From positions 62,001 through 126,000 of the forward strand of contig NC_043026.1 in assembly GCF_006345805.1 (NCBI RefSeq): DNA of 64,000 nt, read 5' to 3'. Of the stretch, positions 2,815 through 33,053 are shown in pieces. The stretch is from Octopus sinensis. Taxonomy: Eukaryota. Numbering within the stretch: the first letter of the stretch is position 1; every line of letters begins with the position of its first letter. The position numbers and the translations under genes are program-made. The notes beneath the pieces are model-generated. The model saw nothing but the letters and a program-made list of their open reading frames with translations, was not told the origin of the DNA and did not search any database.

Positions 2815-3956
2815 GTATGTTTTAAATATACTCTTCTGTTTCGCTATGTAGAGACGTAATATACCAAAAGCACTTTACGCACGCTACTAATATATATATA
2901 TATATATCTGTTTCTTAACACTATATATTTATTCACGATATTTTCTTGAAGCGACCAAAGCATTTCCAGGCTTTCACTATAATATCTTCATTGAATATGA
3001 TATACAGAGTACAAATTTGAACTACATCTGGTTCCCTCACTAATAATGAAATATAATATATCCAGCCTGTCGGCTGATTTGTGAACCCTGCTGATTTCTT
3101 AATTATAATTGTCCTGAATCATTAGAGACTAAATTTGATTTGGTATGGGGTTGCTGGTGGGTACTTACTGCTGATGATATTCAAAGTAGTAGAGATACAT
3201 ATTTAGCAATTCCATCGCAGCTGCTAGATGCTATTTGTCTATTACTGGGGCATTTCTGTAATTTTTAACACTGCACTTCTATATAAGTCGCTTTCTGGAT
3301 ACGAATAACGAAGTTTTCCGATTTCAACAGTGTATCTACATTAAGTGGCCTGTTTTAAAGTGGGGAAACACGAAAATATACATTCACCTTAAAATGTATG
3401 CTATAACTAGTTTTACTTGCGCGTGTTCGTTTTTAAATATTCTTTATTCCATTATATTATTTCTCTTAATTACCAGAATCCATTGCACGCTTATTTTCCT
3501 AATTTGTTTAACAAGGGAAAATGTTATGGTTGTTATATTTGTGGCGCTTTTTCTTACAAATTTTAACTGAAGTCTACTCCGTGTGTAATTTCTTATTTCT
3601 TTGCGTAATTGTACGAGTGTATTTCTGTGTGAGTGTGTGTGTGTCTGCGTGAATGCGTTCCTACGTGTGTGTGGGTGCGTATGCGTGTGTTCACGCACCT
3701 ATGTTGTAAGATAGATCCCGTTGTGAATTTACTTTCTGCCTAATCAAAGAAATCGATTGACGGCTGTTGGAGCCGTCACTACAGATTTTAACAGACTGGT
3801 ATAGATGTCTTTGTATCGTACCTGACGTGTATATACACTCTCGACAGTCCAGTTACTGCAATATTTGTCCTGAGATAGCATTTGTTTTCTCTCATTGTCC
3901 ACTCAGGGAAAATACTACAGCAACTAGTCTATCGACTGTGTGTATATCCTTTCAAT

Positions 3957-4284
3957 GTGAGGGCGCGTGGCTTAGTGGTTAGGGCATTCGGCTCATGATC
4001 GTAAGGTTGTGAGTTCGATTCTCGGCGACGCGTTGTGTCCTTGAGCAAGACACTTTATTTCACGTTGCTCCAGTCCACTCAGCTGGCAAAAATGAGTTGT
4101 ACTTGTATTTCAAAGGGTCAGCCTTGTCACTCTCTGTGTCACGCTGATTATCCCCGAGAACTACGTTAAGGGTACACGTGTCTGTGGAATGCTCAGCCAT
4201 TTGCACGTTAATTTTACGAGCAAGCTGTTCCGTTGATCGTATCAGCTGGGACCCTCGTCTTCGTAACCGGCGGAGTCTTTTTAG
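3957..4284 (+). mobile_element. tRNA-derived SINE in intron 3 of A, with an 11-bp target-site duplication
   Basis: A-box (gtggcttagtggttagg) and B-box (gagttcgattc) head. TSD atcctttcaat at 3946-3956 and 4285-4295. Empty site in B near 20450. Confidence 0.85.
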
Positions 4285-4423
4285 ATCCTTTCAATATGAT
4301 ACACAAATGGCTATTTTAAATAAATACTGGTTCAAATGTGTACATCGAACATAATGGTATATTTAATAAATGTTTATATTTTCTCATTCTGAAACCCAAA
4401 CGAATTTCTCTCCAACTTTATAG

Positions 4424-4587
4424 CGGTGTACGTCGCTTCTATATAACGAACCACAACGGTGGCTGTTCTGTTGAGAGTGGCTGGCTAGCCCTAAACGAAG
4501 CTGGAGTATACTGTGCATATGATAAAATGAATCACTTCCCTGCAATTCGTTATTCTGATGCAAAATCGAGAACCATCTGGAACAACG
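4424..4587 (+). CDS. Paralogue A, coding exon 4 (GVRRFYITNHNGGCSVESGWLALNEAGVYCAYDKMNHFPAIRYSDAKSRTIWNN)
   Basis: Acceptor ctttatag and donor gtaagt at 4588. 164 nt, phase 2 to 1, in frame with exons 3 and 5. Homologues in B, C and D. Confidence 0.85.
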
Positions 4588-5089
4588 GTAAGTGATGCTT
4601 CCATTTTATGTCTTTCTGTGTCTCTGTCTTCCCCCTCTCTCTCTCTCTTTCTCCCTATCTATATGTCTGTCAATCTCCCTGTCTAGCTATCTGTCTATCT
4701 ATCTATACACGATCCCTATTGATCGGCCCCATTTTCCTTTTTTTTTTTCACGATCCCTTTTGATAGGAATTCGACCCTTCTTTTTTTTTCTCCTTCTCTT
4801 GTTCCCCAAAAGAAAAGCACTACTTTATATTTTGCCCCGTCTGTGTCTAGCCCCTGCGTGGCCAATAAATAAATCGATTCTCAATGTGAGTAGTAATTGC
4901 AGCCAATCAGCCTGATCCAACTGATTTATGATCAAAGGTGTTCTGACCATGACCCACCTGGATATTTCCCATTACACTATGTGTAGACTTGGCTGCAATT
5001 TCTAGTAATTCGAGTGACCACCTTTAAAGCCCTCCCACGATATATTTGAATGTCTTTTTGTTGTTGATGTTGTTATTTGTTACTTGCAG

Positions 5090-5145
5090 GTTATGCATTA
5101 GCAGACTCCATGGCCATATTCATCCGCCTGAGGCAGCAGAACTAA
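5090..5145 (+). CDS. Paralogue A, terminal coding exon 5 (GYALADSMAIFIRLRQQN*)
   Basis: Acceptor tacttgcag. The phase-1 join gives an open frame to TAA at 5143-5145. Conserved in all four copies. Confidence 0.8.
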
Positions 5146-5244
5146 CCTAGCACATGATACCCATTGATACTATTGTTGTTGTTAACGCCCATCCAATCCA
5201 GCTGACCACCACTAGTGATCCGCATAGGTCAAGTAATACCTGTT

Positions 5245-5250
5245 AATAAA
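5245..5250 (+). promoter_or_regulatory. Candidate polyadenylation signal AATAAA of paralogue A
   Basis: 100 nt after the stop codon. The same hexamer lies in homologous sequence in B (19467-19472, -), C (51405-51410, +) and the diverged D (60900-60905, -). Confidence 0.5.
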
Positions 5251-5892
5251 GAATCCATAAAAAATATTGGTGATCTTTCGTATTGAGTCGACAATTTATA
5301 AGCAGGCTTCTTCGGTAATTTCTGTGAACACGTGATCTCTTGTCAACTGCGTGCTTCTTCTGTCTGACGTGTCGAAGTGGAAGGGGAAGCTAATGGACCT
5401 ACGTCTGTGTGTGTGTGTGCGTGCTTCTTTTTGTGTGTGTGTGAGTGCTTGTTCTGTTTTTATGTATTTATGGGTGTGGAATGTAGATATAAAAGCCTTG
5501 CGTATTTTTTCTTACCTGCTTCATGTGTTTAAGTAAAATCTGCAAATTTCCAAAAAGAAAACAAGATCGACGTCGAAAAAGCCATCTCAGTTATAGTACA
5601 CAGGCACACACACACAAGAACAAACTCATACAATCATACACTCGTTAGCTTCTTCTTCCTCTTCGACACGTCAATCAGAACAAGCACGCAGTTGGCAAGA
5701 CAACACGTGCTCACGGAAACTAACGAATATTTTGTTTTCATTCGTCTACTCAAAACGAAGCTATGCCAAACTATTCCATCCAACATCGGTCTTTTGAGTT
5801 GTCATTCTCTTTCTCTCTCTCCAGGGACAGAACTGTTTTTGTTATTGTTCCAGGTCACATCTGACCATAAATATGCATGCGTGTGTGTATGA

Positions 5893-5930
<38 letters not shown>

Positions 5931-6533
5931 GTGTGTGAACTTCTTTATTTGTATTAAAGCTACCAATGGTTTCAGGTCATGAAAAGATCGTTGTATCTTA
6001 AGAATTTTTCAAGGCCATCACATGAAGGAACAGTTTTCGCCTCCATTTTGTGTTATAAACATAAACGGAGAAAAAAACCATGTGATCGGCTGGAAAAATT
6101 GTTAAGATAGGAGTGGCTGTGAGATACGTACCTTGCTTACCAGCTACATGGTTCCGGGTTCAATATCACTGCGTGGCGCCTTCGGCAAGTGCATTCTACT
6201 GTATCCTCAGGCCGAACAAAGTCTTCTAAGTGGATTTGCTAGACGGAAAGTGAAAGAAGCCCGTCGTATATATATTGAGTGTGTGTCTGTGTGTCTGTGT
6301 TTGTCCCCCCAACATCGCTTGACAACCGATGCTGGTGTGTTTACGCCCCGGCAACTTGGCGGTTTAAAGTACTAGGCTTACAAAGAAGAAGTACTGCGGC
6401 AGTTTTGCTCGACTAAAGGAGCTGCCACAGCATGGCCGCGTTCAAATGACTGAAACATAAGAGTAGAAGAATAAAAGAATATTTTCTAAACATGAATAAA
6501 ATGGTAGCATTAATGCTTCAATAATATGATTAA

Positions 6534-6620
<87 letters not shown>
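6534..6620. repeat. (TAGA)n microsatellite (homologues 18067-18158 and 52754-52918)
   Basis: Directly visible; length differs between the three duplicated copies. Confidence 0.95.
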
Positions 6621-9294
6621 CAACAGACTTCTTTCAGTTTCCGCCAACCAAACCTACTCACAAGGCTTTGGTCGGCCAGACTCGAAGATATTTGCGAAAG
6701 TTGCCCCGAAATGGGACTCAACATGGAACCAAGTGGTTGGTAAGCAAATAAGTAACTTTGTAATTACAAGAGTAAAAATTATCAAATAATTATTTAGTAG
6801 TTGTGAGCATGCGAATTTACAGTCAGAAGACATAAATACTTTTAAATATAATAGTATATGAAATATACGCGGAGTGATAAGTATCATGTGGATTTCTTAC
6901 ATGCTAAAAATAGCAGTCAAAGTCTAAAACCACGAAAGAATATTCTTACATTAAAGCACGTTGATTTGTAATCAAGCAACACATTTGAGTGAATAAAAAT
7001 ATAGTAAACCTTATACTCAAGGGTTTCACTATTAAAGACAAAATAAATCATTTAATGAAATAATTTATTGATTAATTAATTTTCTATAGCTCGTCGGAAA
7101 GGTCGCTAATTAAATGCATAAACATAAAACTGCAATACATATCGAAAACACAAATTAAACAGATGCGCACTCTGGTCCATGTTTATGCATCATTGATTCA
7201 TCTCAGAATGCCCGCAAACAATGTGCAACATATACATATATATATATATACATGTATATAATATTTGTGACTTGGAACCAGTGAAAGGATAATTAAACTA
7301 TAGCATTTAACACCAATTCAAAGCCAAACAGTGTTAAACAATGTGTGTGTATGCCTTTTGTTTGTAATTAAAAAGTGCACTGATAATTTCTGTGATACAT
7401 GTAGAAACACGCAGGGAGAAGTTGGTGAAAACTGTTCTTGTTACAATGTTTCGAAATCGATAACCAAGTCACGTGGAAATGTTGATAGAGGCAAGAGTGC
7501 TTACGTGATTAATTGATGTTAAATGAAGAGGTATCTTTTGAGATGGCAACTAGGAAGGATTTAAATCGATTGTGTACGAATGCCGAACTATGAGAAAATC
7601 CGCATTGACGAATGCCTTTCTACAATGTAAGTCTTAGTCTAAGCGGAGAAGGAACACACACGAGGACGGAAAGTCTTTCCTGTAGATGTCACACGTGTAT
7701 GACGAAAGATTCATGGATAATGGCCATGAGTTAGAATAAGAACAGTAGTAAACGAGTGAAGAGCGAAGATATGGTGCGTGTGTTTATTTGGCAAATAAAC
7801 AAGAACAACGACAGTAATTTTATTCAGCTGAATACACGTTATTGATTGGTTGAAATTACCGAAATACGACAACTTTAACGTGAAATAACTTCGTAAATAT
7901 AAGTTTTTCTCCAAAATGCTGAGAGTAAAATATGTTTTATATGACACATTCTATCAGTGTCCGAAGTTTCAAAGTGTTTAGTTGCGAAAAAATTAATTTC
8001 TAAATCTGTAGGTCAAAAGGTAAAGATCCTATAACGAGATAATAAATAACGTCCTCGCAAATCGTTGTACTCAAGATACACAATACTTGTACTTACACTC
8101 GACAATACGCAACTCTCGGCTTTACACAGCTCACCGACTCTCCTTTTCTTTATTTGGCACCCAGGCCTTAACAGAGAGGGGACAACAAAAGGACAGACAG
8201 AACACAACAAATGGGGACAAAAAATATGCAGCGAACGCAAAATGAAAAAATGTATAATGAAATCGATCCTGATGAAATGGCTGCATGAGCCCCACTCCGA
8301 TTCTTTATTTAGGCACTCGGCAACTAACACGGAGGGGACACTACAAGGACAGACACAACACCACAGTGGGGACAATAAACATAAAACGAATGAGCATGAC
8401 TATTATATAATAATGAAAGATGAATGGTTGCAGGAGCCCCACTCACAAGCAGTACCATTTAACTGTTAATTTAGACAATTTTTTAGTTTTCTTTTTTCTT
8501 TTTGCATTTTCTTTCCCATTTAAAAAAAAATCTATTTCCTTCATTTTTTCTTTCTTATTTTTTCTTCTCTTTTTACCTTTTTAAAGGACTCCTCTATTAC
8601 CATTCATTAGGGGCATTAATTCCTCGTATTTATCTTCTTTTGGTAGTTGCTCAAATTAAATTTCTTTCCCCAAAGGGTTCACATAGTCCTTTCAACCTTT
8701 TATACCTTTCCTTGTCAATCGCCACACCCTTGATGTGTTCCAGCTAACGTTCAGCTGGCAATCCTATTCTTATGGCACCTTTGAATTTCCTTATTTTTCG
8801 CTCTATGTCGGTGCTTTTCACATATATTACTACAATCCACTTTTTCTTATTAGTAATTACTTGGTTACGCTCCGGACATGGGCGGTCCTGGCTATTCGTT
8901 TCCCTTCGTTCCTCCGTCTGTACATAACCATAACCGTCCACGATTATATTTTCTAATCTATGTAGCGATACTTCTGCTGGGGTATCGGCCAGTTCATCGG
9001 TACCTCCTCTATTTACTCAATTTTGCACCGTTGACACGACTGGAGCGGCATCACGTGATGTAGAAACTATGTTAGCATGAATACCTTTGGCAGGCTGAAC
9101 CATTTTGTGCACGTGCTCGAGAATATCACGATGCCAAATATTCTCCATTTTCAAATATAATATTCAGTTCTAGGAAAACCAATTTCCTTTAAGGGGATCG
9201 AAAACATCCCATTTTCCACCGGTTCTTCAGTTAAATACCCAATATGATAGAGAAAGATTTATCAAAACTAAAAAGGGTATATATTCAATTTTGA

Positions 9295-9947
9295 AGCACT
9301 CCGTCGGTTACGACAACGAGGGTTCCGGTTGATCCGAATAAACGGAACAGCCTGCTCGTGAAATTAACGTGTAAGTGGCTGAGCACTCCACAGACACGTG
9401 TACCCTTAACGTAGTTCTCGGGGATATTTAGCGTGACACAGAGAGTGACAAGGCCGGCCCTTTGAAATACAGGTACAACAGAAGCAGGTAGTAAGAGAGA
9501 GAGAAAGTTGTGGTGAAAGAGTACAGCAGGGATCACCACCATCCCCTGCCGGAGCATCGGATGGAAGCACTCCGTCGGTTACGACGACGAGGGTTCCGGT
9601 TGATCCGAATCAACGGAACAGCCTGCTCGTGAAATTAACGTGTAAGTGGCTGAGCACTCCACAGACACGTGTACCCTTAACGTAGTTCTCGGGGATATTC
9701 AGCGTGACACAGAGAGTGACAAGGCCGGCCCTTTGAAATACAGGTACAACAGAAGCAGGTAGTAAGAGAGAGAGAAAGTTGTGGTGAAAGAGTACAGCAG
9801 GGATCACCACCATCCCCTGCCGGAGCCTCGTGGAGCTTTAGGTGTTTTCGCTCAATAAACACTCACAACGCCCGGTCTGGGAATCGAAACCGCGATCCTA
9901 TGACCGCGAGTCCGCTGCCCTAACCACTGGGCCATTGCGCCTCCACA
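9295..9947 (-). mobile_element. tRNA-derived SINE with a tandem duplication of its 3' ~270 bp (copies at 14699-15070 + and 55585-56240 -)
   Basis: Head ggaggcgcaatggcccagtggttagggcagc...ggtttcgattccc. The body shares ccccgagaactacgttaagggtacacgtgtc with the 3957 SINE. Confidence 0.8.
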
Positions 9948-10178
9948 TATATTCAATATAGATAGATTAAAAGGATAGAGAGAATTACAATTTTCATGTT
10001 TTAATCTTAATTTATTAACATTATAATATACTTATACTATAGGCGCAGGAGTGGCTGTGTGGTAAGTAGCTTACTTACCAACCACATGGTTCCGGGTTCA
10101 GTCCCACTGCGTGGCACCTGGGGCCGACCGAAGCCTTGTGAGTGGATTTGGTAAATGGAAACTAAAAGAAGCCCGTCG

Positions 10179-10219
<41 letters not shown>

Positions 10220-11058
10220 TTGTGTTTGTCTCCCCAACATCGCTTGACAACCGATGCTGGTGTGTTTCCGTCCCCGATACATAGCGGTTCGGCGAAAGAG
10301 ACCGATAGAATAAGTACTCGGCTTACAAAGAATAAGTCCCGTGGTCGATTTGCTCGAGTAATGGGCGGTTTTCCATTAGACAAATTATTAACATTAGTTA
10401 TCTCCCTTGCATCCTGTTGAAGCTCAAGTTTCGAACTGTACTGCTTTTTTATGTAAATAATTTTTGCTGTTAACATGGTCCGATTTGAATTTTTTCTTCT
10501 ACGGAAGGAAGAGCAAGCCTTCTTCTGTCATACTCTCAATTTTGGTCAACCCCACTGCGTAACTGGTACTTAATTTATCGACCCCGAAAGGATGAAAGGC
10601 AAAGTCGAACTCGGTGGAATTTGAACTCAGAACGTATCGGCAGACAAAATACGGCTACGCACTTCGGCCGGCGTGCTAACGTTTCTGCCAGCTCGCCGCC
10701 TTTACTGGCTTTAATATACTTAACGTTATCCCTTTAACTTGCTTACGAATGGCGGAATATAAAACGAACAGGTTTCACCAGTTTCAGACTGCAGTTTAAG
10801 ACGGGGTGTACACCTTTTTAAGTGTGCGTGTCTCTGATGTATATTCATGTATTTCTTTTTATTTGCATATGTTTATACTGTTTTCACTCATCCTTTTTCA
10901 CTGTGTCTGTGTGTTCGTTCATTGTTTCCCTCTCTTTTTCTTTCTATCCTTTTTATTCCTCTTTCCTTCTACTCTTTCTATTCTTGCCTCCTTTTCTACT
11001 TCTATAACCAAGTCATCAACACCTCACACCACTACCACTCCTCCTAAACTTTACTCAA

Positions 11059-11431
11059 TCTCTCTATATATAAACGGCAGTTTGTCTGTGTGTGTTTCTG
11101 TGTGTCTGATACGTTGTACCCTCACCCTGACCACGGCTTTCAACCGATTCTGATGAAACTTGACACACACATAGCCCAATGTCATAATTCAAAACTAACG
11201 CAGCGAAAATTTTGAAAAGTTCCCCCAGTTCTGAAAAAAATCGATAAATTCGACATGGGGTCGAGAATCAGAAACACAAACCACAGACTGTCTAGGGGAC
11301 GCAACTCGACCTTTTTAACTAAAAAAAAAATTTACCATCATTTTTTTTCCATTTTTTGGCTTTAAGTCTCTAAAAATGCCTTATAGTTATTTCCCTTACA
11401 AACCCGAGCAACGCCGGGCGATACTGCTAGT
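11059..11431 (+). mobile_element. Non-autonomous Helitron-like element (copies 57343-57713 + and 38576-38970 -)
   Basis: Starts tctctctatatataaa and ends cccgagcaacgccgggcgatactgctagt (TC...CTAG termini). The same terminus appears reversed at 38576. Confidence 0.55.
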
Positions 11432-11443
11432 ACTTATTATATG

Positions 11444-11850
11444 TGAGCTGGCAGAAACGTTAGCACGCCGGGCGAAATGCTTCACGGTATTTCGTCTGCC
11501 GCTACGTTCTGAGTTCAAATTCCGCCGAGGTCGACTTTGCCTTTCATCCTTTCGGGGTCGATAAATGAAAGTACCAGTTACGCACTGGTTTCGATGTAAT
11601 CGACTTAATACCTATGTCTGTCTTTGTTTGTCCCCTCTGTGTTTAGCCCCTTGTGGGCAATAAAGAAATAGGAAATAGATATTTCGTCTGCCGCTACGTT
11701 CTAAGTTCAAATTCCGCCGAGGTCGGCGTTGCCTTTCATCCCTTCGTGGTCGATAAATTAAGTACCAGTTACGCACTGGGATCCATGTAATCGACTTAAT
11801 CCCTTTGTCTGTCCTTGTTTGTGCCCTTTGTGTTTAGCCCCTTGTGGCTA
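11444..11850 (+). mobile_element. SINE of the gagctggcagaaacgttagc family with a tandemly repeated body (other copies ~10553-10705 -, 13925-14075, 44316-44850, 48945-49095, 57727-58140)
   Basis: Recurrent ctacgttctgagttcaaattccgccgaggtcgactttgcctttcatcc..gtaccagttacgcactgg unit. Two units here and about four at 44316-44850. Confidence 0.75.
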
Positions 11851-12472
11851 ATAAATAAAAATAATATTATATGTTTCTATCATTAACTCGGCTCTTCTTC
11901 CTCTATATTCCCTCTCTTTCTTTATCTCTCTCTCTCTCTCTCTCTCTCTTATTCTTCCCATACTCTGTCTTTTTCTCTTTCCTTTCATTCCTTCTTGATT
12001 TATCGGTTTACATTTCGTTCCAAGTTGTTAATAGAAACACCAGAAGCCTGTCACTGGGTGTCTGTGTTTGTTTGGCCCCTTGCAGGGCTATATTCGGCCC
12101 CACAAACAATGGGCGTTTTAATCACATACAACTAAGCAAGATGGCGGAGAGCATCTTCAAAGAGTTAAAAAGAATAAACTGGCTCTCTCGCAGGTGACTG
12201 CTGAAGATTTCCCTCCCCTACACGTATATAAACAAATAATTTATGTGCATCACTTTGAAGAATTTACTCGAACAAATCGACCGAAGACTTATTCTATGAA
12301 GTTCATTCTATCGGAATGTCGAGTCTCTAAGTTACGGGGACGGAGACACACCAACAATAGTTGTGAAGCAAACGCCACAACACACAAACAAACCAAAAGG
12401 AACACGCTCGCACGCATATCACACACACATACACACACAAACACGCTCATCCTCACACATATACCCACAGAC

Positions 12473-12517
<45 letters not shown>

Positions 12518-12699
12518 ACATATACATTGTTTTGTTAAAACCGAAAAACCTTCAGAAAACTCTGACCCAGGCTTTCACGTGACCGTTCATTAGACAGTTA
12601 GGATAGCTCGGAATAATTAAATTATGTGAGTACATATATATCACAATGCGAGATCTGATCAAAACGTATCGGGACTGCTGCTATAAAGAGGAAACTACA

Positions 12700-13060
12700 A
12701 CACACAGGAATTCAGGATTTCATCTCCTTCGAAGTATTTCTCTTCTGAAGCAACACAATTTATGAAGCATCGTTTCAGTCGTCAGGAACATCCCTGGAAT
12801 TCATTTCTGAGGATAGCGAGCATCTACCTCGTCGAATTCTCTAGGATTTTCTCGACATCTTCAAATCTTTTGGGCCTTCCACTACGAAGACCTTGGTTCC
12901 GGTGTCATAGCAACAGGCACAAGGTCTTCACCTGTAATGACGTTTTTCAAATGACTTCCTAGACACAACCAAATAGATTCTGCACCGCTGACAGCCTTTC
13001 TTCTTCTTGGGACAACCACACTCAAGACACTTTACTTCTAAACACTGCTATCAACAACGG
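12700..13060 (-). mobile_element. Internally deleted mariner transposase remnant (copy at ~58975-59330)
   Basis: The minus strand reads LKNVITGE..CYD.PETKV.S.WK..RPK joined directly to a C-terminal RFEDVE.I.ENSTR.MLAI.RNEFQGC..RLKRC..CVASEEKYFEGD, which resembles mariner DD34D transposase with the catalytic core missing. Confidence 0.55.
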
Positions 13061-13305
13061 AAGTTAGTGGAAACTTTATAACCACCGTGAATGATCACCA
13101 TATTTCATTCTGTAACTGCCACCTCTGAAGTGTGCAGTGTTACATAATAGATCGGACTCTTACCTAACATTCCATTGAACCCATAGTGACAAAACGATGG
13201 GTTAGATCGTCTCTAATATATGTATAAAACTGTACGTATTATATATATATATATATATACATTAAATATATTATGTATATTATATATGTATGGATATATA
13301 TGTAT

Positions 13306-13372
<67 letters not shown>

Positions 13373-13384
13373 ATACATAATATA

Positions 13385-13845
13385 TATATACAACTTATAA
13401 ACAAGGGCAAAAGAAATAATTATCATGCCAAATATGCGGAAAATAGACAAATCTTGTTCACTTCCGGACTCTCTCACTCTATGAGAGTTTTCAGTCCGAT
13501 CGCACGTGTCTCGAGGTGTGCTGGAGAATTTCTATTTTGGATATTTTTGTGGTACTTAAGTATGCTCATGACTTAATGTTTGCTTCTTCCATGGGTATAA
13601 GTAAGTATTTCATTTATTTCTTACGGTATTTATCGCTGACGAGGAAAAAATTGTTATGAATTAACTCTGAAATTGGGAGCGATATGATATTAACGGAATT
13701 TTTTAGAAATTTCTGTCGGCTTACTTCGAGACACGTGCTTATAGCAATAACTTATATGGTTAGTGATGATGTGTCTATTTTCGGCATATTTCGCATTAGG
13801 ATTTTTCTTTTCCCTTGTTTATAAGTTGTTTATAAATTTAACCTT
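13385..13845. mobile_element. MITE-like element with ~60-bp imperfect terminal inverted repeats (copy 59826-60290)
   Basis: acaacttataaacaagggcaaaagaaa..aaatatgcggaaaatagaca is mirrored by tgtctattttcggcatatttcg..ttttcccttgtttataagttgt. Confidence 0.6.
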
Positions 13846-14401
13846 TAAAGTTATTTTTCAATATGCTGCCATTCGTAAGCAAGTTAAAGGGATAACGTTA
13901 AGTATATTAAAGCCAGTAAAGGCGGCGAGCTTGCAGAAACGTTAGCACACCGGCCGAAGAGCGTAGCCGTATTTTGTCTGCCGATACGTTCTGAGTTCAA
14001 ATTCCACTGATGTCAACTTTGCTTTTCATCTTTTCGGTGTCGATAAATTAAGTACCAGTTACGCAGTGCGGTTGACCAAAATTGAGATTATGACAGAAGA
14101 AGGCTTGCTCTTCCTTCCGTAGAAGAAAAAATTCAAATCGGACCATGTTAACAGCAAAAATTAATTACATAAAAAAGCAGTACAGTTCGAAACTTGAGCT
14201 TCAACAGGATGCAAGGGAGATAACTAATGTTAATAATTTGTCTAATGGAAAACCGCCCATTACTCGAGCAAATCGACCACGGGACTTATTCTTTGTAAGC
14301 CGAGTACTTATTCTATCGGTCTCTTTCGCCGAACCGCTATGTATCGGGGACGGAAACACACCAGCATCGGTTGTCAAGCGATGTTGGGGAGACAAACACA
14401 A

Positions 14402-14442
<41 letters not shown>

Positions 14443-17108
14443 CGACGGGCTTCTTTTAGTTTCCATTTACCTAATCCACTCACAAGGCTTCGGTCGGCCC
14501 AAGGCTATAGTAGAAGACACTTGCGCCAGGTGCCACGCAGTGGGACTGAACCCGGAACCATGTGGTTGGTAAGTAAGCTACTTACCACACAGCCACTCCT
14601 GCGCCTATAGTATAATTATATTATAATGTTAATAAATTAAGATAAAAATATGAAAATTGTAATTCTCTCTATCCTTTTAATCTATCTATATTGAATATAT
14701 GTGGAGGCGCAATGGCACAGTGGTTAGGGCAGCGGACTCGCGGTAATAGGATCGCGGTTTCGATTCCCAGACCGGGCGTTGTGAGTGTTTATTGAGCGAA
14801 AACACCTAAAGCTCCACGAGGCTCCGGCAGTGGATGGTGGTGATCCCTGCTGTACTCTTTCACCACAACTTTCTCTCTCTCTTACTTCCTGCTTCTGTTG
14901 TACCTGTATTTCAAAGGGCCGGCCTTGTCACTCTCTGTGTCACGCTGAATATCCCCGAGAACTCCGTGTCTGTGGAGTGCTCAGCCACTTACACGTTAAT
15001 TTCACGAGCAGGCTGTTCCGTTGATTCGGATCAACCGGAACCCTCGTTGTCGTAACCGACGGAGTGCTTCAAAATTGAATATATACCCTTTTTAGTTTTG
15101 ATAAATCTTTCTCTATCATATTGGGTATTTAACTGAAGAACCGGTGGAAAATGGGATGTTTTCGATCCCCTTAAAGGAAATTGGTTTTCCTAGAACTGAA
15201 TATTATATTTGAAAATGGAGAATATTTGGCATCGTGATATTCTCGAGCACGTGCACAAAAAAGGTTCAGCCTGCCAAAGGTATTCATGCTAACATAGTTT
15301 CTACATCACGTGATGCCGCTCCAGTCGTGACAACGGTGCAAAATTGAGAAAATAGAGGAGGTACCGATGAACTGGCAGATACCCCAGCAGAAGTATCGCT
15401 ACATAGATTGGAAAATATAATCGTGGACGGTTATGGTTATGTACAGACGGAGGAACGAAGGGAAACGAATAGCCAGGACCGCCCATGTCCGGAGCGTAAC
15501 CAAGTAATTACTAATAAGAAAAAGTGGATTGTAGTAATATATGTGAAAAGCACCGACATAGAGCGAAAAATAAGGAAATTCAAAGGTGCCATAAGAATAG
15601 GATTGCCAGCTGAACGTTAGCTGGAACACATCAAGGGTGTGGCGATTGACAAGGAAAGGTATAAAAGGTTGAAAGGACTATGTGAACCCTTTGGGGAAAG
15701 AATTTTAATTTGAGCAACTACCAAAAGAAGATAAATACGAGGAATTAATACCCCTAATGAATGGTAATAGAGGAGTCCTTTAAAAAAGTAAAAAGAGAAG
15801 AAAAAATAAGAAAGAAAAAATGAAGGAAATAGATTTTTTTTTAAATGGGAAAGAAAATGCAAAAAGAAAAAAGAAAACTAAAAAATTGTCTAAATTAACA
15901 GTTAAATGGTACTGCTTGTGAGTGGGGCTCCTGCAACCATTCATCTTTCATTATTATATAATTGTCATGCTCATTCGTTTTATGTTTATTGTCCCCACTG
16001 TGGTGTTGTGTCTGTCCTTGTAGTGTCCCCTCCGTGTTAGTTGCCGAGTGCCTAAATAAAGAATCGGAGTGGGGCTCATGCAGCCATTTCATCAGGATCG
16101 ATTTCATTATACATTTTTTCATTTTGCGTTCGCTGCATATTTTTTGTCCCCATTTGTTGTGTTCTGTCTGTCCTTTTGTTGTCCCCTCTCTGTTAAGGCC
16201 TGGGTGCCAAATAAAGAAAAGGAGAGTCGGTGAGCTGTGTAAAGCCGAGAGTTGCGTATTGTCGAGTGTAAGTACAAGTATTGTGTATCTTGAGTACAAC
16301 GATTTGCGAGGACGTTATTTATTATCTCGTTATAGGATCTTTACCTTTTGACCTACAGATTTAGAAATTAATTTTTTCGCAACTAAACACTTTGAAACTT
16401 CGGACACTGATAGAATGTGTCATATAAAACATATTTTACTCTCAGCATTTTGGAGAAAAACTTATATTTACGAAGTTATTTCACGTTAAAGTTGTCGTAT
16501 TTCGGTAACTTCAACCAATCAATAACGTGTATTCAGCTGAATAAAATTACTGTCGTTGTTCTTGTTTATTTGCCAAATAAACACACGCACCATATCTTCG
16601 CTCTTCACTCGTTTACTACTGTTCTTATTCTAACTCATGGCCATTATCCATGAATCTTTCATCATACACGTGTGACATCTACAGGAAAGACTTTCCGTCC
16701 TCGTGTGTGTTCCTTCTCCGCTTAGACTAAGACTTACATTGTAGAAAGGCATTCGTCAATGTGGATTTTCTCATAGTTCGGCATTCGTACACAATCAATT
16801 TAAATCCTTCCTAGTTGCCATCTCAAAAGATACCTCTTCATTTAACATCAATTAATCACGTAAGCACTCTTGCCTCTATCAACATTTCCACGTGACTTGG
16901 TTATCGACTTCGAAACATTGTAACACAAACAGTTTTCACCAACTTCTCCCTGCGTGTTTCTACATGTATCACAGAAATTATCAGTGCACTTTTTAATTAC
17001 AAACAAAAGGCACACACACACACATTGTTTAACACTGTTTGGCTTCGATTTGGTGTTAAATGCTATAGTTTAATTATCCTTTCACTGGTTCCAAGTCACA
17101 AATATTAT

Positions 17109-17169
<61 letters not shown>

Positions 17170-17171
<2 letters not shown>

Positions 17172-17430
17172 TGATTGATTGATTCTAGTTTCAGCTCATG
17201 AGCAGTGGCCAAGCTGGGGCACCGCCATTCGGTGTTGCTACATGGTTTTACCTCACGAAAGCTTTTTAGCAACTGCCATTTGGTGCATGAGAGAGTTCGA
17301 TGCAGCTGCCCTCATCTGCACCTCCTGCCGTGAAGTTGGTTCATCTGGGACACCTGACAGGAAGAGATCCAGTTTCATTTTAAAGATATCTGCATCCACC
17401 CCATGCAGGTCTCTTAGGTTCTTCGGGAGG
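17170..17430 (-). mobile_element. CR1/Jockey-group LINE 3' fragment inserted in a TA tract, specific to the B arm
   Basis: ORF 17253-17465 LPKNLRDL...FKMKLDLFLSGVPDEPT...RAAASNSLMHQ resembles a LINE ORF2 C-terminus. Absent at the homologous TA tracts near 7240 and 53530. Confidence 0.65.
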
Positions 17431-18065
17431 ATATATATATATATATATATATATATGTTGCACATTGTTTGCGTGCATTCTGAGATGAATCAATGATGCA
17501 TAAACATGGACCAGAGTGCGCATCTGTTTAATTTGTGTTTTCGATATGTATTGCAGTTTTATGTTTATGCATTTAATTAGCGACCTTTCCGACGAGCTAT
17601 AGAAAATTAATTAATCAATAAATTATTTCATTAATTGATTTATTTTGTCATTAATACCGAAACTCTTGAGTATAAGGTTTACTATATTTTTATTCACTCA
17701 AATGTGTTGCTTGATTACAAATCAACGTGCTTTAATGTAAGAATATTCTTTCGTGGTTTTAGACTTTGACTGCTATTTTTAGCATGTAAGAAATCCACAT
17801 AATACTTTTCACTCAGCGTATATTTCATATACTATTATATTTAAAAGTATTTATGTCTTCTGACTGTAAATTCGCATGCTCACAACTACTAAATAATTAT
17901 TTGATAATTTATACTCATGTAATTATAAAGTTACTTATTTGCTTACCAACCACTTGGTTCCATGTTGAGTCCCATTTCGGGGCAACTTTCGCAAATATCT
18001 TCGAGTCTGGCCGACCAAAGCCTTGTGAGTAGATTTGGTTGGCGGAAACTGAAAGAAGCCCGTTG

Positions 18066-18152
<87 letters not shown>

Positions 18153-18732
18153 CTATCTAATATTATTTGAGCATCAATACTACCCTGTTATTCATGTTTA
18201 GAAAATATTCTTTTATTCTTCTACACTTATGTTTCAGTCATTTGAATGCGGCCATGCTGTAGCAGCACCTTTAGTCGAGCAAAACTGCCGCAGTACTTAT
18301 TCTTTGTAAGCCTAGTACTTTAAACCGCCAAGTTGCCGGGGCGTAAACACACCAGCATCGGTTGTGAAGCGATGTTGGGGGGACAAACACAGACACAGAG
18401 ACACACATTCAATATATATACGACGGGCTTCTTTCACTTTCCGTCTAGCAAATGCACTTAGAAGGCTTTGATCGGCCTGAGGCTACAGTAAAATGCACTT
18501 GCCAAAGGAACCATGTAGCTGGTAAGCAAGGTACGTATCACACAGCCACTCCTATCTTAACAATTTTTCGAGCCGATCACATGGTTGTTTTTCTCCATTA
18601 AGGTTTATAACACAAAATGGTGACGAAATCTGTTCCTTCATGTGATGGCCTTGAAAAATTGTTAAGATACAACGATCTTTTCATGACCTGAAACCATTGG
18701 TAGCTTTAATACAAATAAAGACGTTCACACAC

Positions 18733-18792
<60 letters not shown>

Positions 18793-19076
18793 ATGCATAT
18801 TTTTGGTCAGATGTGACCTGGAACAACAACAAACCAGTTCTGTCGCTGGACAGAGACAAAGAGAATGACAACTCAAAAGACCGATGTTGGATGGAATAGT
18901 TTGGCATAGCTTCGTTTTGAGTAGACGAATGAAAACAAAATATTCGTTAGTTTCCGTGAGCACGTGTTGTCTTGCCAACTGCGTGTTTTTTCTGATTGAC
19001 GTGTCGAAGAGGAAGAAGAAGCTAATGAGTGTATGATTGTGTGAGTTTGTTCTTGTGCGCGCGTGCTTGTTCACGT

Positions 19077-19125
<49 letters not shown>

Positions 19126-19571
19126 ATAACTGTGATGGCTTTTCGACGTCGATCTCGTTTTCTTTTTGGAAATTTACAGATTTTACTTACGCACATGAAG
19201 CAGGTGAGAAGAAATACGCAAGGCTTTTATATCTACATTCCACACCCATAAATACATAAAAACAGAACAAGCACTCACACACACACAAAAAGAAGCATGC
19301 ACACACACACAGACGTAGGTCCATTAGCTTCCCCTTCCACTTCGACACGTCAGACAGAAGAAGCACGCAGTTGACAAGAGATCACGTGTTCACAGAAATT
19401 ACCGAAGAAGCCTGCTTATAAATTGTCGACTCAATACGAAAGATCACCAATATTTTTTATGGATTCTTTATTAACAGGTATTACTTGACCTATGCGGATC
19501 ACTAGTGGTGGTCAGCTGGATTGGATGGGCGTTAACAACAACAATAGTATCAATGGAAATCATGTGCTGGG

Positions 19572-19627
19572 TTAGTTCTGCTGCCTCAGGCGGATGAATA
19601 TGGCCATGGAGTCTGCTAATGCATAAC
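19572..19627 (-). CDS. Paralogue B, terminal coding exon 5 (GYALADSMAIFIRLRQQN*)
   Basis: Reverse complement of A exon 5 with the same acceptor and TAA. Confidence 0.78.
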
Positions 19628-20136
19628 CTGCAAGTAACAAATAACAACATCAACAACAAAAAGACATTCAAATATATCGTGGGAGGGCTTTAAAGGTGGT
19701 CACTCGAATTACTAGAAATTGCAGCCAAATCTACACATAGTGTAATGGGAAACATCCAGGTGGGTCATGGTCAGAACACCTTTGATCATAAATCAGTTGG
19801 ATCAGGCTGATTGGCTGCAATTACTACTCACATTGAGAATCGATTTATTTATTGGCCACGCAGAGGCTAGACACAGAAGGGACAAATATAAAATAGTGCT
19901 TTTCTTTTGGGGTCAAGAGAAGGAGAAAAAAAGAAAGAAAAAAGAGGGGTCGAATTCCGATCAAAAGGGATCGTGAAAAAAAAAAAAGAAAATGGGGCCG
20001 ATCAATAGGGATCGTGTATAGATAGATAGACAGATAGCTAGACAGGGAGATTGACAGACAGATAGATAGGGAGAAAGAGAGAGAGAGAGGGGGGAGACAG
20101 AGACACAGAAAGACATAAAATGGAAGCATCACTTAC

Positions 20137-20300
20137 CGTTGTTCCAGATGGTTTTCGATTTTGCATCAGAATAACGAATTGCAGGGAAGTGATCCATTTC
20201 ATCATATGCACAGAACATTTGATCTTGAACTACGGCTAGCCAGCCACTCTCAGAAAGACAGCCATCGTTGTGGTTCGTTATATAGAAGCGACGTACATTC
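20137..20300 (-). CDS. Paralogue B, coding exon 4 (NVRRFYITNHNDGCLSESGWLAVVQDQMFCAYDEMDHFPAIRYSDAKSKTIWNN)
   Basis: Acceptor ctttgtag, donor gtaagt, 164 nt. Homologous to exon 4 of A and C. Confidence 0.82.
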
Positions 20301-21477
20301 CTACAAAGTTGGAGAAGAACTCGTTTGGGTTTCAGAATGAGAAAATATAAACATTTATTAAATATACCATTATGTTCGACGTACACATTTGAACAAGTAT
20401 TTTATTAAAATAGCCATTTGTGTATCATATTGAAAGGATATACACACAGTCGATAGGCTAGTTTCTGTAGTATTTTCCCTGAGTGGAGTATGAGAGAAAA
20501 CAACTGCTATCTCAGGACAAATATTGCAGTAACTGGACTGTCGAGAGTGTATATACACGTCAGGTACGATACAAAGACATCTATACCAGTCTGTTAAAAT
20601 CTGCAGTGACGGCTCCAACAGCCGTCAATAGATTTCTTTGATTAGGCAGAAAGTAAATTCACAACGGGATCTATCTTACAACATAGGTGCGTGAACACAC
20701 GCATAAGCACGCACACACACGCACGAACGCATTCACGCAGACACACACACACTCACACAGAAATACACTCGTACAATTACGCAAAGAAATAAGAAATTAC
20801 ACACGAAGTAGACTTCAGTTAAAATTTGTAAGAAAAAGCGCCACAAATATAACAACCATAACATTTTCCCTTGTTAAACAAATTAGGAAACTAAGCGTGC
20901 AATGGATTCTGGTAATTAAGAGAAATAATATAATGGAATAAAGAATATTTAAAAACGAACACGCGCAAGTAAAACTAGTTATAACATACATTTTAATGTG
21001 AATGTATATTTTCGTGTTTCCTCACTTTAAAACAGGCCGCTTAATGTAGATACACTGTTGAAATCGGAAAACTTCGTTATTCGTATCCAGAAAGCAACTC
21101 ATATAGAGGAACAGTGTTAAAAATTACAGAAATGCCCCAGTAATAGACAAATAGCATCTAGCAGCTGCGATGGAATTGCTAAATATGTATCTCTACTACT
21201 TTGAATGTCATCAGCAGTAAGTACCCACCAGCAACCGCATACCAAATCAAATTTAGTTTCTAATGATACAGGACAATTATAATTAAGAAATCAGCAGGGT
21301 TCACAAATCAGCAGACAGGCTGGATATAGTATATTTCATTATTAGTGAGGGAACCAGATGTAGTTCAAATTTGTACTCTGTATATCATATTCAATGAAGA
21401 TATTATAGTGAAAGCCTGGAAATGCTTTGGTCGCTTCAAGAAAATATCGTGAATAAATATATAGTGTTAAGAAACAG

Positions 21478-21560
<83 letters not shown>

Positions 21561-21586
21561 TATATATATACATATATATAAGTATG

Positions 21587-21621
<35 letters not shown>

Positions 21622-21622
21622 C

Positions 21623-21702
<80 letters not shown>

Positions 21703-21750
21703 CTTATATATATGTATATATATATTTATATATATATATATATATATATA
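21478..21750. repeat. Expanded (TA)n tract abutting the Penelope end (only ~9 units at the homologous site near 2890-2907)
   Basis: Directly visible. Confidence 0.9.
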
Positions 21751-26672: not shown

Positions 26673-26730
<58 letters not shown>

Positions 26731-27243: not shown

Positions 27244-27331
<88 letters not shown>

Positions 27332-27676: not shown

Positions 27677-27855
27677 CTCATCGATTGGAAGACGGGTCCA
27701 GATATCAAGAAAAGGATGTCTGAAGAATTTGGGACAAAAGGTACCATTGCATTCGTACACATTCCAGGTTGAAGGACTTTCTATATTCATAAATGAATTA
27801 TAGACTTTCGAACCAGCTCCCATTGATATGGCATATGTTTTAATCCACTGGCTGT
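27677..27855 (-). CDS. Paralogue B, coding exon 2 (SQWIKTYAISMGAGSKVYNSFMNIESPSTWNVYECNGTFCPKFFRHPFLDIWTRLPIDE)
   Basis: Not in the ORF track; read by hand. Acceptor atttcag, donor gtaggt, 179 nt, phase 1 to 0, no stop codon. Homologous to 45369-45546. Confidence 0.85.
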
Positions 27856-32723: not shown

Positions 32724-33053
32724 TTCTATAGAAGGAAATCTCGTTCTCGTTATTCGTGCTGACGACTGTCATTATATTTTCGGTGAGTAATTCTTACAAG
32801 CATGGCTGACTTTGTTGTAAGTGAAATATTGCGATTGGCTCCTCTGAGCGAGCGCGGTGCAGTCGAGTAGGTTTCGTGTTGAGAAGAATTGTTCTGTTGG
32901 AGGTGTCCCAATATAATCATAGGAATAACCAGGCCCCAAACGTTTGTAGTAAGCGTCATCACATTTCTGACCTGAGGTGACAGCCAGGATTGTTGTAAGA
33001 GCTAACAGCAGCACTTCCATTGCAGCAGGACGGGTAAAAGGAAACAGGGACAT
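32724..33053 (-). CDS. Paralogue B, coding exon 1: signal peptide plus PAN/Apple-like module (MSLFPFTRPAAMEVLLLALTTILAVTSG-QKCDDAYY...DCTALAQRSQSQYFTYNKVSHACKNYSPK-[-1 nt]-IMTVVSTNNENEISFYR)
   Basis: ORF 32772-33053 aligns end to end with exon 1 of C. Hydrophobic N-terminus; donor gtaagt at 32723-32718. 330 nt versus 331 in C; the missing base is in the T-run at 32777-32780. Confidence 0.8.

What the first reader, a model, noticed from the sequence alone, without database searches (positions are those of the whole stretch)
20137..20300. Exon 4 of A vs B: 14 changed codons, none synonymous, clustered between the two cysteines
Codon-by-codon comparison of the 54 whole codons gives G>N, G>D, S>L, V>S, L>V, N>V, E>Q, A>D, G>Q, V>M, Y>F, K>E, N>D and R>K, with no synonymous-only change. 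Nine of these lie between the cysteines (CSVESGWLALNEAGVYC in A/C, CLSESGWLAVVQDQMFC in B, CTRDEGWLQIIEYAGGSC in D), while C, GWL and C stay fixed and the flanking introns look far more similar. This is the pattern expected of a hypervariable binding loop under diversifying selection on a fixed scaffold.
Basis: partly seen in the sequence, partly recalled or inferred. Interest (0 to 1): 0.75.

Follow-up and report, generated by a model that had tools for sequence, protein, structure and literature searches.

The report
Mosaic hypervariable exon, octopus gene family
The all-replacement divergence in this exon is real, but about half of it is sequence shared with another gene copy, so it mainly shows patchy gene conversion in a fast-diversifying, uncharacterised octopus secreted-protein family, not a fresh burst of selected mutations.

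Summary
Window 20137-20300 (- strand) is exon 4 of copy B of a five-exon Octopus sinensis gene. Against copy A (4424-4587) it has 14 changed codons, all non-synonymous, nine of them between two invariant cysteines. That is 22/164 differences, against 3.3% in about 3.7 kb of flanks.

From an (AT)n repeat in intron 3 onwards, A, B and C are 96-98% identical, because an 8-11 kb block was recently homogenised. 5' of the repeat they are old paralogues. The contrast between exon and introns therefore comes largely from the flanks.

At 15 of the 29 sites that set B apart, B carries the base of a fourth paralogue, E (LOC118768584), which lies elsewhere on the same chromosome. One such stretch is the last 30 intron bases plus the first two exon bases. 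Point mutation cannot produce this sharing; it indicates patchy gene conversion or retained older sequence. Only 5-9 bases are unique to B.

dN/dS for A-B is 3.6 but not significant (p=0.17). Across 32 octopod proteins, exon 4 is the most variable exon, and the A/B sites are its most variable columns on a fixed C/GW/C/P/Y scaffold. Diversifying selection is plausible but unproven. The family has no Pfam or PDB match.

The parts
20137..20300 (-). Exon 4 of copy B (the finding). Phase is 1 nt + 54 codons + 1 nt, and both splice sites are intact.
20299..20330 (-). Tract in B made of the last 30 nt of intron 3 plus the first two exon bases. It is identical to paralogue E (L005) and differs from A/C at 6 positions. 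This is the clearest exchanged or retained patch.
   Evidence: (run of 6 consecutive B=E sites, permutation p 0.002)
20213..20233 (-). 21-nt tract covering codons 23-29 (LNEAGVY in A, VVQDQMF in B). 11 of 21 bases differ. Codons 23, 24 (GTT) and 27 (CAA) are E-type. Codons 25, 26, 28 and 29 differ from both A and E (the base changes in 25, 28 pos 1 and 29 are seen in none of seven other paralogues). No template is present in the window.
20253..20257 (-). Codons 15-16, just after the first cysteine (SV in A, LS in B). These positions differ in every paralogue examined.
20154..20404 (-). Full extent of the divergent island in B, equivalent to A 4320-4570. About 12% differs from A/C. Sequence on either side is 97-99% identical to A/C.
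4424..4587 (+). Exon 4 of copy A (LOC118768575, protein P0158). The block A 4285-4584, which includes all but the last 3 bases of this exon, is identical in the O. vulgaris orthologue (L001).
50580..50743 (+). Exon 4 of copy C. It differs from A at 2 nt (K>E and one synonymous change).
61509..61672 (-). Exon 4 of copy D, an old paralogue. It is 26.7% different from A in the exon, against about 17% in the flanking introns.
19572..19627 (-). Exon 5 of B (GYALADSMAIFIRLRQQN*). It is identical to A and C and unlike the GYGIADSMAIFISLRQQEYPGP* of D and E. This shows that B's 3' half is A-type.
13861..21495 (-). B arm: an inverted copy of A 2890-10760 at 93-98% identity. The junction with the A unit is also present in the O. 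vulgaris assembly.
2890..13873 (+). A unit 3' block. It is homologous to C 49093-60319 at 96-98%, and its first 7.9 kb is homologous to the B arm.
21478..21750 (.). (AT)n microsatellite in intron 3 of B. A shorter (AT)n sits at the same place in A, C, D, the O. vulgaris copy and L004. It marks the 5' boundary of the homogenised block. In this assembly exon 3 is absent beyond it.
27677..27855 (-). Exon 2 of B, from an older lineage (84% nt identity to C exon 2).
32724..33053 (-). Exon 1 of B (signal peptide plus a cysteine-containing N-terminal region). It has a 1-nt deletion in an A5 run relative to the alternative scaffold L004, which reads through.
3946..4284 (+). SINE-like insertion in intron 3 of A, and at about 50102-50440 in C. 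It has a 15-bp target-site duplication ATCCTTTCAAT(G/A)TGA. B has the empty site, 35 nt from the start of the divergent island.
   Evidence: ARAGORN finds no tRNA

Best explanation
Exon 4 of copy B is a paralogue mosaic inside a recently homogenised block.

The window comes from a tandem array of an octopod-specific family of small secreted proteins on Octopus sinensis chromosome CM016888.1. Genes A and C face their neighbours B and D tail to tail.

An 8-11 kb segment was homogenised among A, B and C before the O. sinensis / O. vulgaris split. It starts at an (AT)n repeat in intron 3 and runs through exons 4 and 5 into the downstream DNA. B received it as an inverted copy. This gave B an A-type 3' half attached to an older, different 5' half.

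Inside that block, about 170-250 bp centred on exon 4 of B (20154-20404) was not homogenised, or was converted again. It carries short tracts of the sequence type found in paralogue E, interleaved with A-type sequence and a few B-specific changes.

Paralogues of this family differ almost only at replacement sites in this exon. Any exchanged patch therefore looks all non-synonymous.

Shown here: the block structure, the sharing with E, and the family-wide hypervariability of the exon.

Inferred: the patchy conversion mechanism, and that the variability of the two loops tied by the Cys-Cys pair is kept by diversifying selection on a ligand-contacting surface.
For: 1. Block structure. A 2890-3960 matches B 21495-20425 at 97.2%. 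A 2937-13297 matches C at 96-98%. Immediately 5' of the (AT)n, A matches C at only 81% and A matches B (L004) at 89%. The A/B inverted junction (window 13699-14389) is 99% conserved in O. vulgaris.

2. B is chimeric.
- Its 5' flank and exon 1 region is closest at the DNA level to paralogue E (88-92% nt).
- Exon 3 (on L004) is closest to C (dS 0.08; 0.20 to A).
- Exon 5 is A-type, not the D/E type.

3. Sharing with E. At 29 sites where B differs from A=C, E has B's base at 15. About 7% would be expected for independent mutations (binomial p = 1e-10).
- There is a run of 6 consecutive B=E sites at the acceptor (permutation p = 0.002).
- The last 30 nt of the intron plus the first 2 exon bases are identical in B and E, and A differs at 6 of those positions.
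- Codons 24 (GTT) and 27 (CAA) match E entirely.

4. The divergent island extends into the intron: 7/139 B-private differences against 1.3-1.4% outside, and 4 differences in the 24 nt next to the exon (Poisson p = 0.004).

5. The ratio of A-B to A-E divergence differs between the exon (22 vs 33) and the flanking intron (10 vs 50) (Fisher p = 0.007).

6. Both A-type and B-type states recur in other paralogues, and patchy private clusters occur elsewhere in the block.

7. Family variability: the entropy results, and exon 4 more diverged than introns between A and D (26.7% vs about 17%).
Against: - Synonymous divergence between A and B in exon 4 is low (1.5 changes, dS 0.047). Relative to A-E (dS 0.24), this is the same ratio as in the introns. 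If the whole exon were an old unconverted piece, about 6 synonymous changes would be expected (Poisson P(<=2) = 0.06). So the old material must be confined to short patches, or part of the excess really is new replacement change.
- 5-9 bases (codons 12, 15, 16, 25, 26, 28, 29) are found in no other sampled paralogue, or only one. All are non-synonymous. They exceed the flank rate (P(>=7) = 0.03).
- B is not markedly closer to E than to A over the whole exon (31 vs 22 differences).
- No donor for the B-specific bases was found.
- Only 9 of more than 40 paralogues could be compared at the DNA level.
Confidence: 0.6

Rival explanations
1. One reading: after a recent duplication, point substitutions in the inter-cysteine loop of B (and A) were driven to fixation by diversifying selection. 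Introns and synonymous sites drifted at the neutral rate.
For: - There are 14 replacement and 0 purely synonymous codon changes. NG86 gives dN 0.169 and dS 0.047, so omega is 3.6.
- pN of 0.151 is 4-5 times the intron divergence.
- Scaled to A-E, synonymous depth equals intron depth.
- The changes cluster between the cysteines (p = 0.001) and fall in the family's most variable columns.
- 5-9 changes are unique to B and all are non-synonymous.
Against: - Half of the distinguishing bases, including 4-6 intronic ones and whole multi-base codons, are identical to paralogue E (p = 1e-10). Independent mutation or convergence does not explain that.
- omega > 1 is not significant (Fisher p = 0.17). 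For the B-unique changes, P(all 7 non-synonymous) = 0.20.
- Multi-nucleotide clusters inflate such tests.
- In this assembly B lacks exon 3.
Confidence: 0.2
2. Assembly or polishing artefact. The B arm is really A-like throughout, and reads from other paralogues (E-like and others) were mis-mapped during consensus polishing. That would write paralogue-specific patches into the exon.
For: - The mosaic of short paralogue-type patches inside a 97% identical repeat is what cross-mapped polishing produces.
- The same assembly shows single-base indels in exon 1 of B (an A-run, compared with L004) and exon 2 of C.
- There is a structural discrepancy with scaffold L004 around exon 3.
- No annotated protein anywhere carries the B-type exon.
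Against: - Several B bases occur in none of the sampled paralogues.
- The patches keep an open frame and intact splice sites.
- The inverted arm itself is confirmed by an independent O. vulgaris assembly.
- Similar patchiness is not seen in exon 5 or most of the arm.
Confidence: 0.08
3. Relaxed constraint or a local mutational burst. B is a dead fragment, and the clustered multi-base changes come from error-prone repair linked to the inverted duplication, or from neutral decay.
For: - B has no exon 3 and a frameshifted exon 1 in this assembly, and a reverse-transcriptase remnant in the intron.
- The changes include dinucleotide and complex clusters.
Against: - Neutral decay would give the flank rate (1.3-2.2%), not 13%. 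It would also include synonymous changes and indels.
- There is no stop or frameshift in exons 4-5.
- The sharing with E is templated, not random.
- Scaffold L004 carries intact exons 1-3 of the same gene, annotated as LOC118761864.
Confidence: 0.07

Closest known systems
Tandem multigene recognition families diversified by interlocus gene conversion plus selection on binding loops. Examples are MHC class I/II peptide-binding exons and Biomphalaria FREPs (comparison from general knowledge).
   Same: - It is a tandem array of paralogues.
- One exon is far more variable than the rest, on an invariant Cys/Trp scaffold.
- Short tracts are shared between otherwise divergent paralogues.
- Flanks are homogenised while the variable patch stays distinct.
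- Replacement changes predominate.
   Different: - No ligand, tissue or immune role is known.
- omega > 1 is not statistically established here.
- The diversity is germline between paralogues, with no evidence of allelic or somatic diversification.
- The protein fold is different and undescribed.
Accelerated evolution of secreted toxin or effector genes in which exons diverge faster than introns. Examples are snake venom PLA2 and conotoxins (comparison from general knowledge).
   Same: - These are small secreted cysteine-containing proteins in a lineage-specific expansion.
- Exon 4 is more diverged than the neighbouring introns between old paralogues A and D (26.7% vs about 17%).
- omega is about 1-2.5.
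   Different: - For the A-B pair the exon/intron contrast is mostly produced by homogenised flanks and exchanged tracts.
- There is no evidence that the family is a venom component.
Fibrinogen-related domain (FReD; ficolins, angiopoietins, FGL1)
   Same: - The AlphaFold model of protein A (pLDDT 91.7) finds fibrinogen-like domains as most of its top Foldseek hits, including the best six.
- A Cys-x4-GW(L)-x9-Cys element recalls the disulphide-bridged GWW loop of the FReD ligand-binding P subdomain. That resemblance is from memory.
- Relatives occur in extracellular mosaic proteins.
   Different: - The Foldseek E-value is only 0.014 and TM is 0.36-0.41. No hit reaches E <= 0.001.
- There is no Pfam Fibrinogen_C match in any of 81 members.
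- The profile finds no PDB sequence match.
- The domain is about 150 aa, against about 220 aa for a FReD.
- One distant relative (P0042) carries this domain and a true Fibrinogen_C domain side by side.

Membership tests
Fibrinogen-related domain (Pfam PF00147) | Sequence match to the Fibrinogen_C profile | tested here: not met
   hmmscan of 81 family members at E <= 0.1 gave no Fibrinogen_C hit. P0158, P0160, P0182, P0008 and P0174 also gave none.
Fibrinogen-related domain (Pfam PF00147) | Same fold as solved FReD structures (TM > 0.5, significant Foldseek E-value) | tested here: inconclusive
   The best hit is 7tz2_B (FGL1) with E 0.014, probability 0.80 and TM 0.36/0.32. Most of the top 50 hits are FReDs, but none reaches E <= 0.001.
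Fibrinogen-related domain (Pfam PF00147) | Ca2+ site and ligand pocket next to the disulphide-bridged loop of the P subdomain | not testable with these tools
   Model coordinates are not returned. The motif resemblance is only a recollection.
PAN/apple-domain proteins | Pfam PAN_1/PAN_3/PAN_4 match in the N-terminal cysteine-containing region | tested here: not met
   10 of 81 relatives match PAN_1 (best E 1.5e-7). The octopus proteins P0160, P0182, P0008 and P0174 give no hit even at E <= 1.
Pfam DUF7922 | Profile match over the ~150-aa domain | tested here: inconclusive
   The only hit is a whole-protein hit in the four-repeat relative P0006 (E 1.3e-7, no single stretch passing). There is none in the octopus proteins.
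Gene family under diversifying selection with interlocus gene conversion | Short tracts shared between otherwise divergent paralogues (mosaic structure) | tested here: met
   15 of 29 B-specific sites match E. There is a 32-nt identical tract at the acceptor. The run test gives p 0.002 and the binomial test p 1e-10.
Gene family under diversifying selection with interlocus gene conversion | dN/dS significantly above 1 at the variable sites | tested here: inconclusive
   NG86 omega is 3.6 for A-B (Fisher p 0.17), 0.95-2.5 for the other exon-4 pairs and 0.5-2.4 for exon 3. No site-model test was possible, because CDS was available for only 9 paralogues and recombination is present.
Gene family under diversifying selection with interlocus gene conversion | Variable residues concentrated at particular positions on a conserved scaffold | tested here: met
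   Entropy per column in 32 octopod proteins: exon 4 is 2.01 bits against 0.99-1.30 for the other exons. The changed sites average 2.77 against 1.75 bits (p 0.0016). C145, W151, C161, P170 and Y174 are invariant.
Gene family under diversifying selection with interlocus gene conversion | Variable residues form one exposed surface that contacts a ligand | not testable with these tools
   Only secondary structure is returned. The changed residues lie in the loops 141-148 and 156-161 that flank strand 149-155, and at 165-167 and 180. No ligand is known.

The most novel reading that the evidence does not exclude
The octopod array encodes a germline repertoire of secreted recognition proteins built on an undescribed, distantly fibrinogen-like ~150-aa domain. 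Its disulphide-tied loops (exon 4) would be kept diverse by shuffling of short tracts between tandem paralogues under diversifying selection. That would make it a cephalopod counterpart of gastropod FREPs or of MHC-type patchwork diversification, for example in immune, mucus or chemotactile recognition.
Probability: 0.2. Interest if true: 0.7.

Novelty: new member of a known kind. Interest (0 to 1): 0.4.

Why it matters
Cephalopods have no adaptive immunity, and their lineage-specific gene expansions are mostly unexplained. This work defines a large, unannotated, tandemly arrayed secreted family:
- more than 40 protein clusters in Octopus and Argonauta;
- a domain present in 825 clusters across invertebrate mosaic extracellular proteins;
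- no Pfam, PDB or literature match.

Variability in the family is concentrated in one exon and is reshuffled between paralogues. That makes the family a concrete candidate for a recognition repertoire.

The case is also a caution for scans. An exon that diverges only by replacements between near-identical introns can arise from block homogenisation plus patchy conversion. It does not need a burst of positive selection. Tests such as M7/M8 give false positives under such recombination.

Tried and rejected
- I searched the window for a template of the 21-nt and 27-nt B tracts, allowing up to 3 mismatches. Only the tract itself was found. A local template-switch origin was dropped.
- I asked whether D is the donor. 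D matches B at only 6-7 of 29 sites, so it was rejected.
- I tested the idea that the whole exon is an unconverted old piece. This was rejected as stated because synonymous divergence is too low. Only short patches fit.
- Pfam scans of the exon peptides, of full proteins and of 81 relatives found no family for the domain.
- A profile search of PDB sequences found nothing.
- ARAGORN found no tRNA in the SINE-like insert.
- Five literature searches, including gene IDs and DUF7922, found nothing on the family.
- Attempts to reach the O. vulgaris orthologue of B failed. L001 ends 0.5 kb into the B arm.
- The look-up of P0158 found no record.
- The P0160 and P0159 gene ranges were too long to return DNA.
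- A global A-D alignment failed across intron 3. It was replaced by segment alignments.
- No annotated protein with the B-type loop exists in the protein collection.

Full report
**1. What is at the coordinates**

Window 20137-20300 read on the minus strand is an exon with an intact acceptor (TTTGTAG|G) and donor (AACG|GTAAGT). It holds one base, 54 codons and one base, and encodes NVRRFYITNHNDGCLSESGWLAVVQDQMFCAYDEMDHFPAIRYSDAKSKTIWNN.

tblastn finds three more copies:
- A at 4424-4587 (+);
- C at 50580-50743 (+);
- D at 61509-61672 (-).

- 14 changed codons, none purely synonymous;
- 21 base differences in the 162 nt of whole codons, plus the first exon base;
- nine changed codons in the 15 codons between the two cysteines (hypergeometric p = 0.001).

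The exon differs from A at 22/164 positions. About 3.7 kb of aligned non-coding flank differs at 122/3667 (Fisher p = 1e-7).

**2. What gene this is**

Exons 3-5 of A translate exactly to Octopus sinensis LOC118768575 isoform X3 (P0158). Exon 1 of C (42192-42521) is 100% identical to the N-terminus of LOC118768578. The window is therefore O. sinensis chromosome CM016888.1.

The gene has five exons:
- exon 1: signal peptide plus a cysteine-containing N-terminal region;
- exon 2: ..QWIKTYAISMGAGSKVY..PIDE;
- exon 3: VKLVIYKNQ..;
- exon 4: the finding;
- exon 5: GYALADSMAIFIRLRQQN*.

The family is an octopod expansion. More than 40 clusters at 90% identity come from O. sinensis, O. bimaculoides, O. 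vulgaris and Argonauta. All are named 'uncharacterized', and a typical member is 296 aa.

A profile of the ~150-aa C-terminal domain finds 825 clusters at 50% identity. Many are in mosaic extracellular proteins carrying ZP, EGF, TSP1 or TIG domains, or weak PAN matches.

No curated family covers the domain:
- Pfam gives nothing for the octopus proteins.
- The only Pfam signal is a marginal DUF7922 hit in one distant relative.
- A profile search of PDB sequences finds nothing.
- Five literature searches found no paper.

An AlphaFold model of P0158 is confident (pLDDT 91.7, pTM 0.87). Most of its top Foldseek hits, including the best six, are fibrinogen-like domains, but the matches are weak (E 0.014, TM 0.36-0.41, none at E <= 0.001). 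I treat this as a lead and not as family membership.

**3. Why the introns look so similar**

Self-comparison shows an 8-11 kb block shared by three loci:
- A 2937-13873 matches C 49093-60319 at 96-98%.
- An inverted copy of A 2890-10760 forms the B arm at 21495-13861, at 93-98%.

The 5' edge of the block is an (AT)n microsatellite in intron 3, which all copies possess. Immediately 5' of it the same genes are old paralogues:
- A-C identity is 81%.
- A-B identity is 89%, where B's exon 3 comes from scaffold L004.
- Exon 3 has dS of 0.14-0.20.

The junction between the A unit and the inverted arm (window 13699-14389) is 99% conserved in the independent O. vulgaris assembly (L001). The arrangement is therefore real and predates the split of the two species.

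B is chimeric:
- Its 5' flank and exon 1 region is closest at the DNA level to paralogue E (88-92% nt).
- Its exon 3 is closest to C (dS 0.08).
- Its exon 5 is A-type, whereas genes in the same array position (D, E) end GYGIADSMAIFISLRQQEYPGP*.

The low divergence of the introns is thus a product of recent homogenisation. It is not a neutral yardstick of the age of the exon-4 differences.

**4. The divergent block is a mosaic, not a set of new substitutions**

The elevated divergence starts in the intron:
- There are 7 B-private differences in the 139 nt 5' of the exon, against 1.3-1.4% further out.
- Four differences fall in the 24 nt next to the exon (Poisson p = 0.004).

Paralogue E (LOC118768584; L005, CM016888.1:37292-57962) is about 20% different from A in the flanking introns. 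Even so, at the 29 sites where B differs from A=C, E carries B's base at 15. For independent mutations about 7% would be expected (binomial p = 1e-10).

The sharing with E comes in tracts:
- The last 30 nt of intron 3 plus the first two exon bases are identical in B and E, and differ from A at six positions. This is a run of six informative sites (permutation p = 0.002).
- Codons 23-24 (GTA GTT) are E-type.
- Codon 27 (CAA) is E-type.
- Codons 34, 36 and 49 are E-type.

With seven further paralogues (D, E, L006, two genes in L002, two in L003) the remaining sites sort as follows:
- Several A-type states are unique to A/C.
- Several states of both types recur in other family members.
- Only 5-9 bases (codons 12, 15, 16, 25, 26, 28, 29) are peculiar to B.

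The ratio of A-B to A-E divergence is significantly different in the exon (22:33) and in the flanking intron (10:50) (p = 0.007).

The most economical reading is as follows. A patch of about 170-250 bp (B 20154-20404) either escaped the homogenising event or was converted again from an E-like paralogue. This left an interleaved A-type/E-type exon.

Similar but weaker private clusters occur elsewhere in the block. This fits pervasive short-tract exchange in the array.

**5. What remains of the selection argument**

Nei-Gojobori estimates for exon 4:

| Pair | dN | dS | omega | Note |
|---|---|---|---|---|
| A-B | 0.169 | 0.047 | 3.6 | Fisher p = 0.17 |
| A-E | - | - | 0.95 | |
| A-D | - | - | 1.7 | |
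| B-D | - | - | 2.5 | |

Exon 3 gives omega of 0.5-2.4. None of these values is individually significant.

- Synonymous divergence A-B is low. Scaled to A-E, it matches the introns. So the old material must be confined to short patches, or some replacement excess is genuinely recent.
- The B-unique changes (7-10) exceed the flank rate (P = 0.03 to 0.001), and all are non-synonymous, although P(all 7 non-synonymous) = 0.20 under neutrality.
- Between the old paralogues A and D, exon 4 is more diverged (26.7%) than its introns (about 17%).

- In 32 octopod proteins, exon 4 is the most variable exon (2.01 bits against 0.99-1.30).
- The 14 A/B sites are among its most variable columns (2.77 vs 1.75 bits, p = 0.0016).
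- R134, F136, C145, G150, W151, C161, P170 and Y174 are fixed or nearly so.
- In the model, the changed residues lie in the loops 141-148 and 156-161 on either side of strand 149-155 (SGWLALN), and at 165-167 and 180.

Coordinates are not returned. I could not test whether these residues form one surface or whether C145-C161 pair.

**6. Status of copy B**

In this assembly:
- B has no exon 3.
- It has a 1-nt deletion in an A5 run of exon 1.
- It has a reverse-transcriptase remnant in the intron at 22.1-26.0 kb.

Scaffold L004 is 98.85% identical to window 41882-28418. It carries intact exons 1-3 of the same gene, annotated LOC118761864 (partial), and ends 220 bp after exon 3. B may therefore be intact in one haplotype, or the 21.5-26 kb interval may be misassembled.

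No annotated protein in the collection carries the B-type exon.

An assembly or polishing chimera cannot be excluded from one assembly. I give it about 8%.

**7. Verdict**

- The exon is the hypervariable, scaffold-anchored part of a rapidly diversifying secreted family.
- However, the striking exon/intron contrast in the A-B pair is chiefly the signature of block homogenisation plus patchy paralogue exchange.
- Positive selection is not demonstrated.

The pattern is a new member of a known kind, namely tandem recognition-type families shaped by gene conversion. It occurs in a family and domain that appear undescribed, and that is the main source of interest.

Noticed in passing
window 45369-45546 (+), around 45514-45518: Exon 2 of copy C has a 1-nt deletion relative to B, L004 and family proteins (..FRHPIL then frameshift to ISGTIFQLRR; the correct frame resumes as DFWNYLPIEE). 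C may be a pseudogene, or this may be an assembly indel. NCBI nevertheless uses C's exon 1 for LOC118768578.
   Followed up: partly
window 21500-27674 compared with L004 16400-26279: The interval between exons 2 and 4 of B differs structurally from the alternative scaffold. Exon 3 is present in L004 (25895-26058) but absent in the window. A roughly 4-kb retroelement-like segment (window 22072-25999, RVT_1 28 bits) matches L004 21095-25032 at only 82%, and in the opposite orientation relative to the gene.
   Followed up: partly
window 29790-30687 (also L004 11204-12098): There is a tandem array of about 15 copies of a 60-bp unit at about 96% identity, inside intron 1 of B. It is open in several frames (for example HYNDVIAYVP repeats).
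   Followed up: no
window 3946-4284 and about 50102-50440: A 339-bp SINE-like insertion with a 15-bp target-site duplication is present in A, C and the O. vulgaris copy. B has the empty site. Its 5' end looks tRNA-derived by eye (box A/B-like), but ARAGORN calls no tRNA. Related copies seem to lie at 9293-9830.
   Followed up: partly
window 36246-37290: There is about 1 kb of imperfect short tandem repeat with strong negative GC skew (-0.47 in the 36-38 kb bin). It translates as an endless TYIH repeat.
   Followed up: no
window 42192-42521 and public annotations (P0160, P0159, P0004): Public gene models in this array are unreliable. LOC118768578 and LOC118768579 span 243 kb and 101 kb and join exons of different paralogues. 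The O. vulgaris model P0004 starts with an out-of-frame translation of exon 1.
   Followed up: partly
window 4285-4584 compared with L001 16814-17113: The A-type exon 4 and the adjacent 139 nt of intron show zero differences between O. sinensis and O. vulgaris over 300 nt. The surrounding sequence differs by about 1-2% (P about 0.03). This suggests constraint on the A-type exon.
   Followed up: no
window 1-64000 and L005, L006: The array seems to be built of units about 46 kb long, each holding a convergent (tail-to-tail) gene pair: A and B, then C and D. E and LOC118768580 are further genes of the B/D position type, at 37-58 kb and 221-237 kb on the same chromosome.
   Followed up: partly
window 5500-5700: About 14 substitutions private to the window's A copy cluster next to a CA-microsatellite length difference. 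B, C and the O. vulgaris copy all differ from A here. This is another patch of locally discordant history.
   Followed up: no
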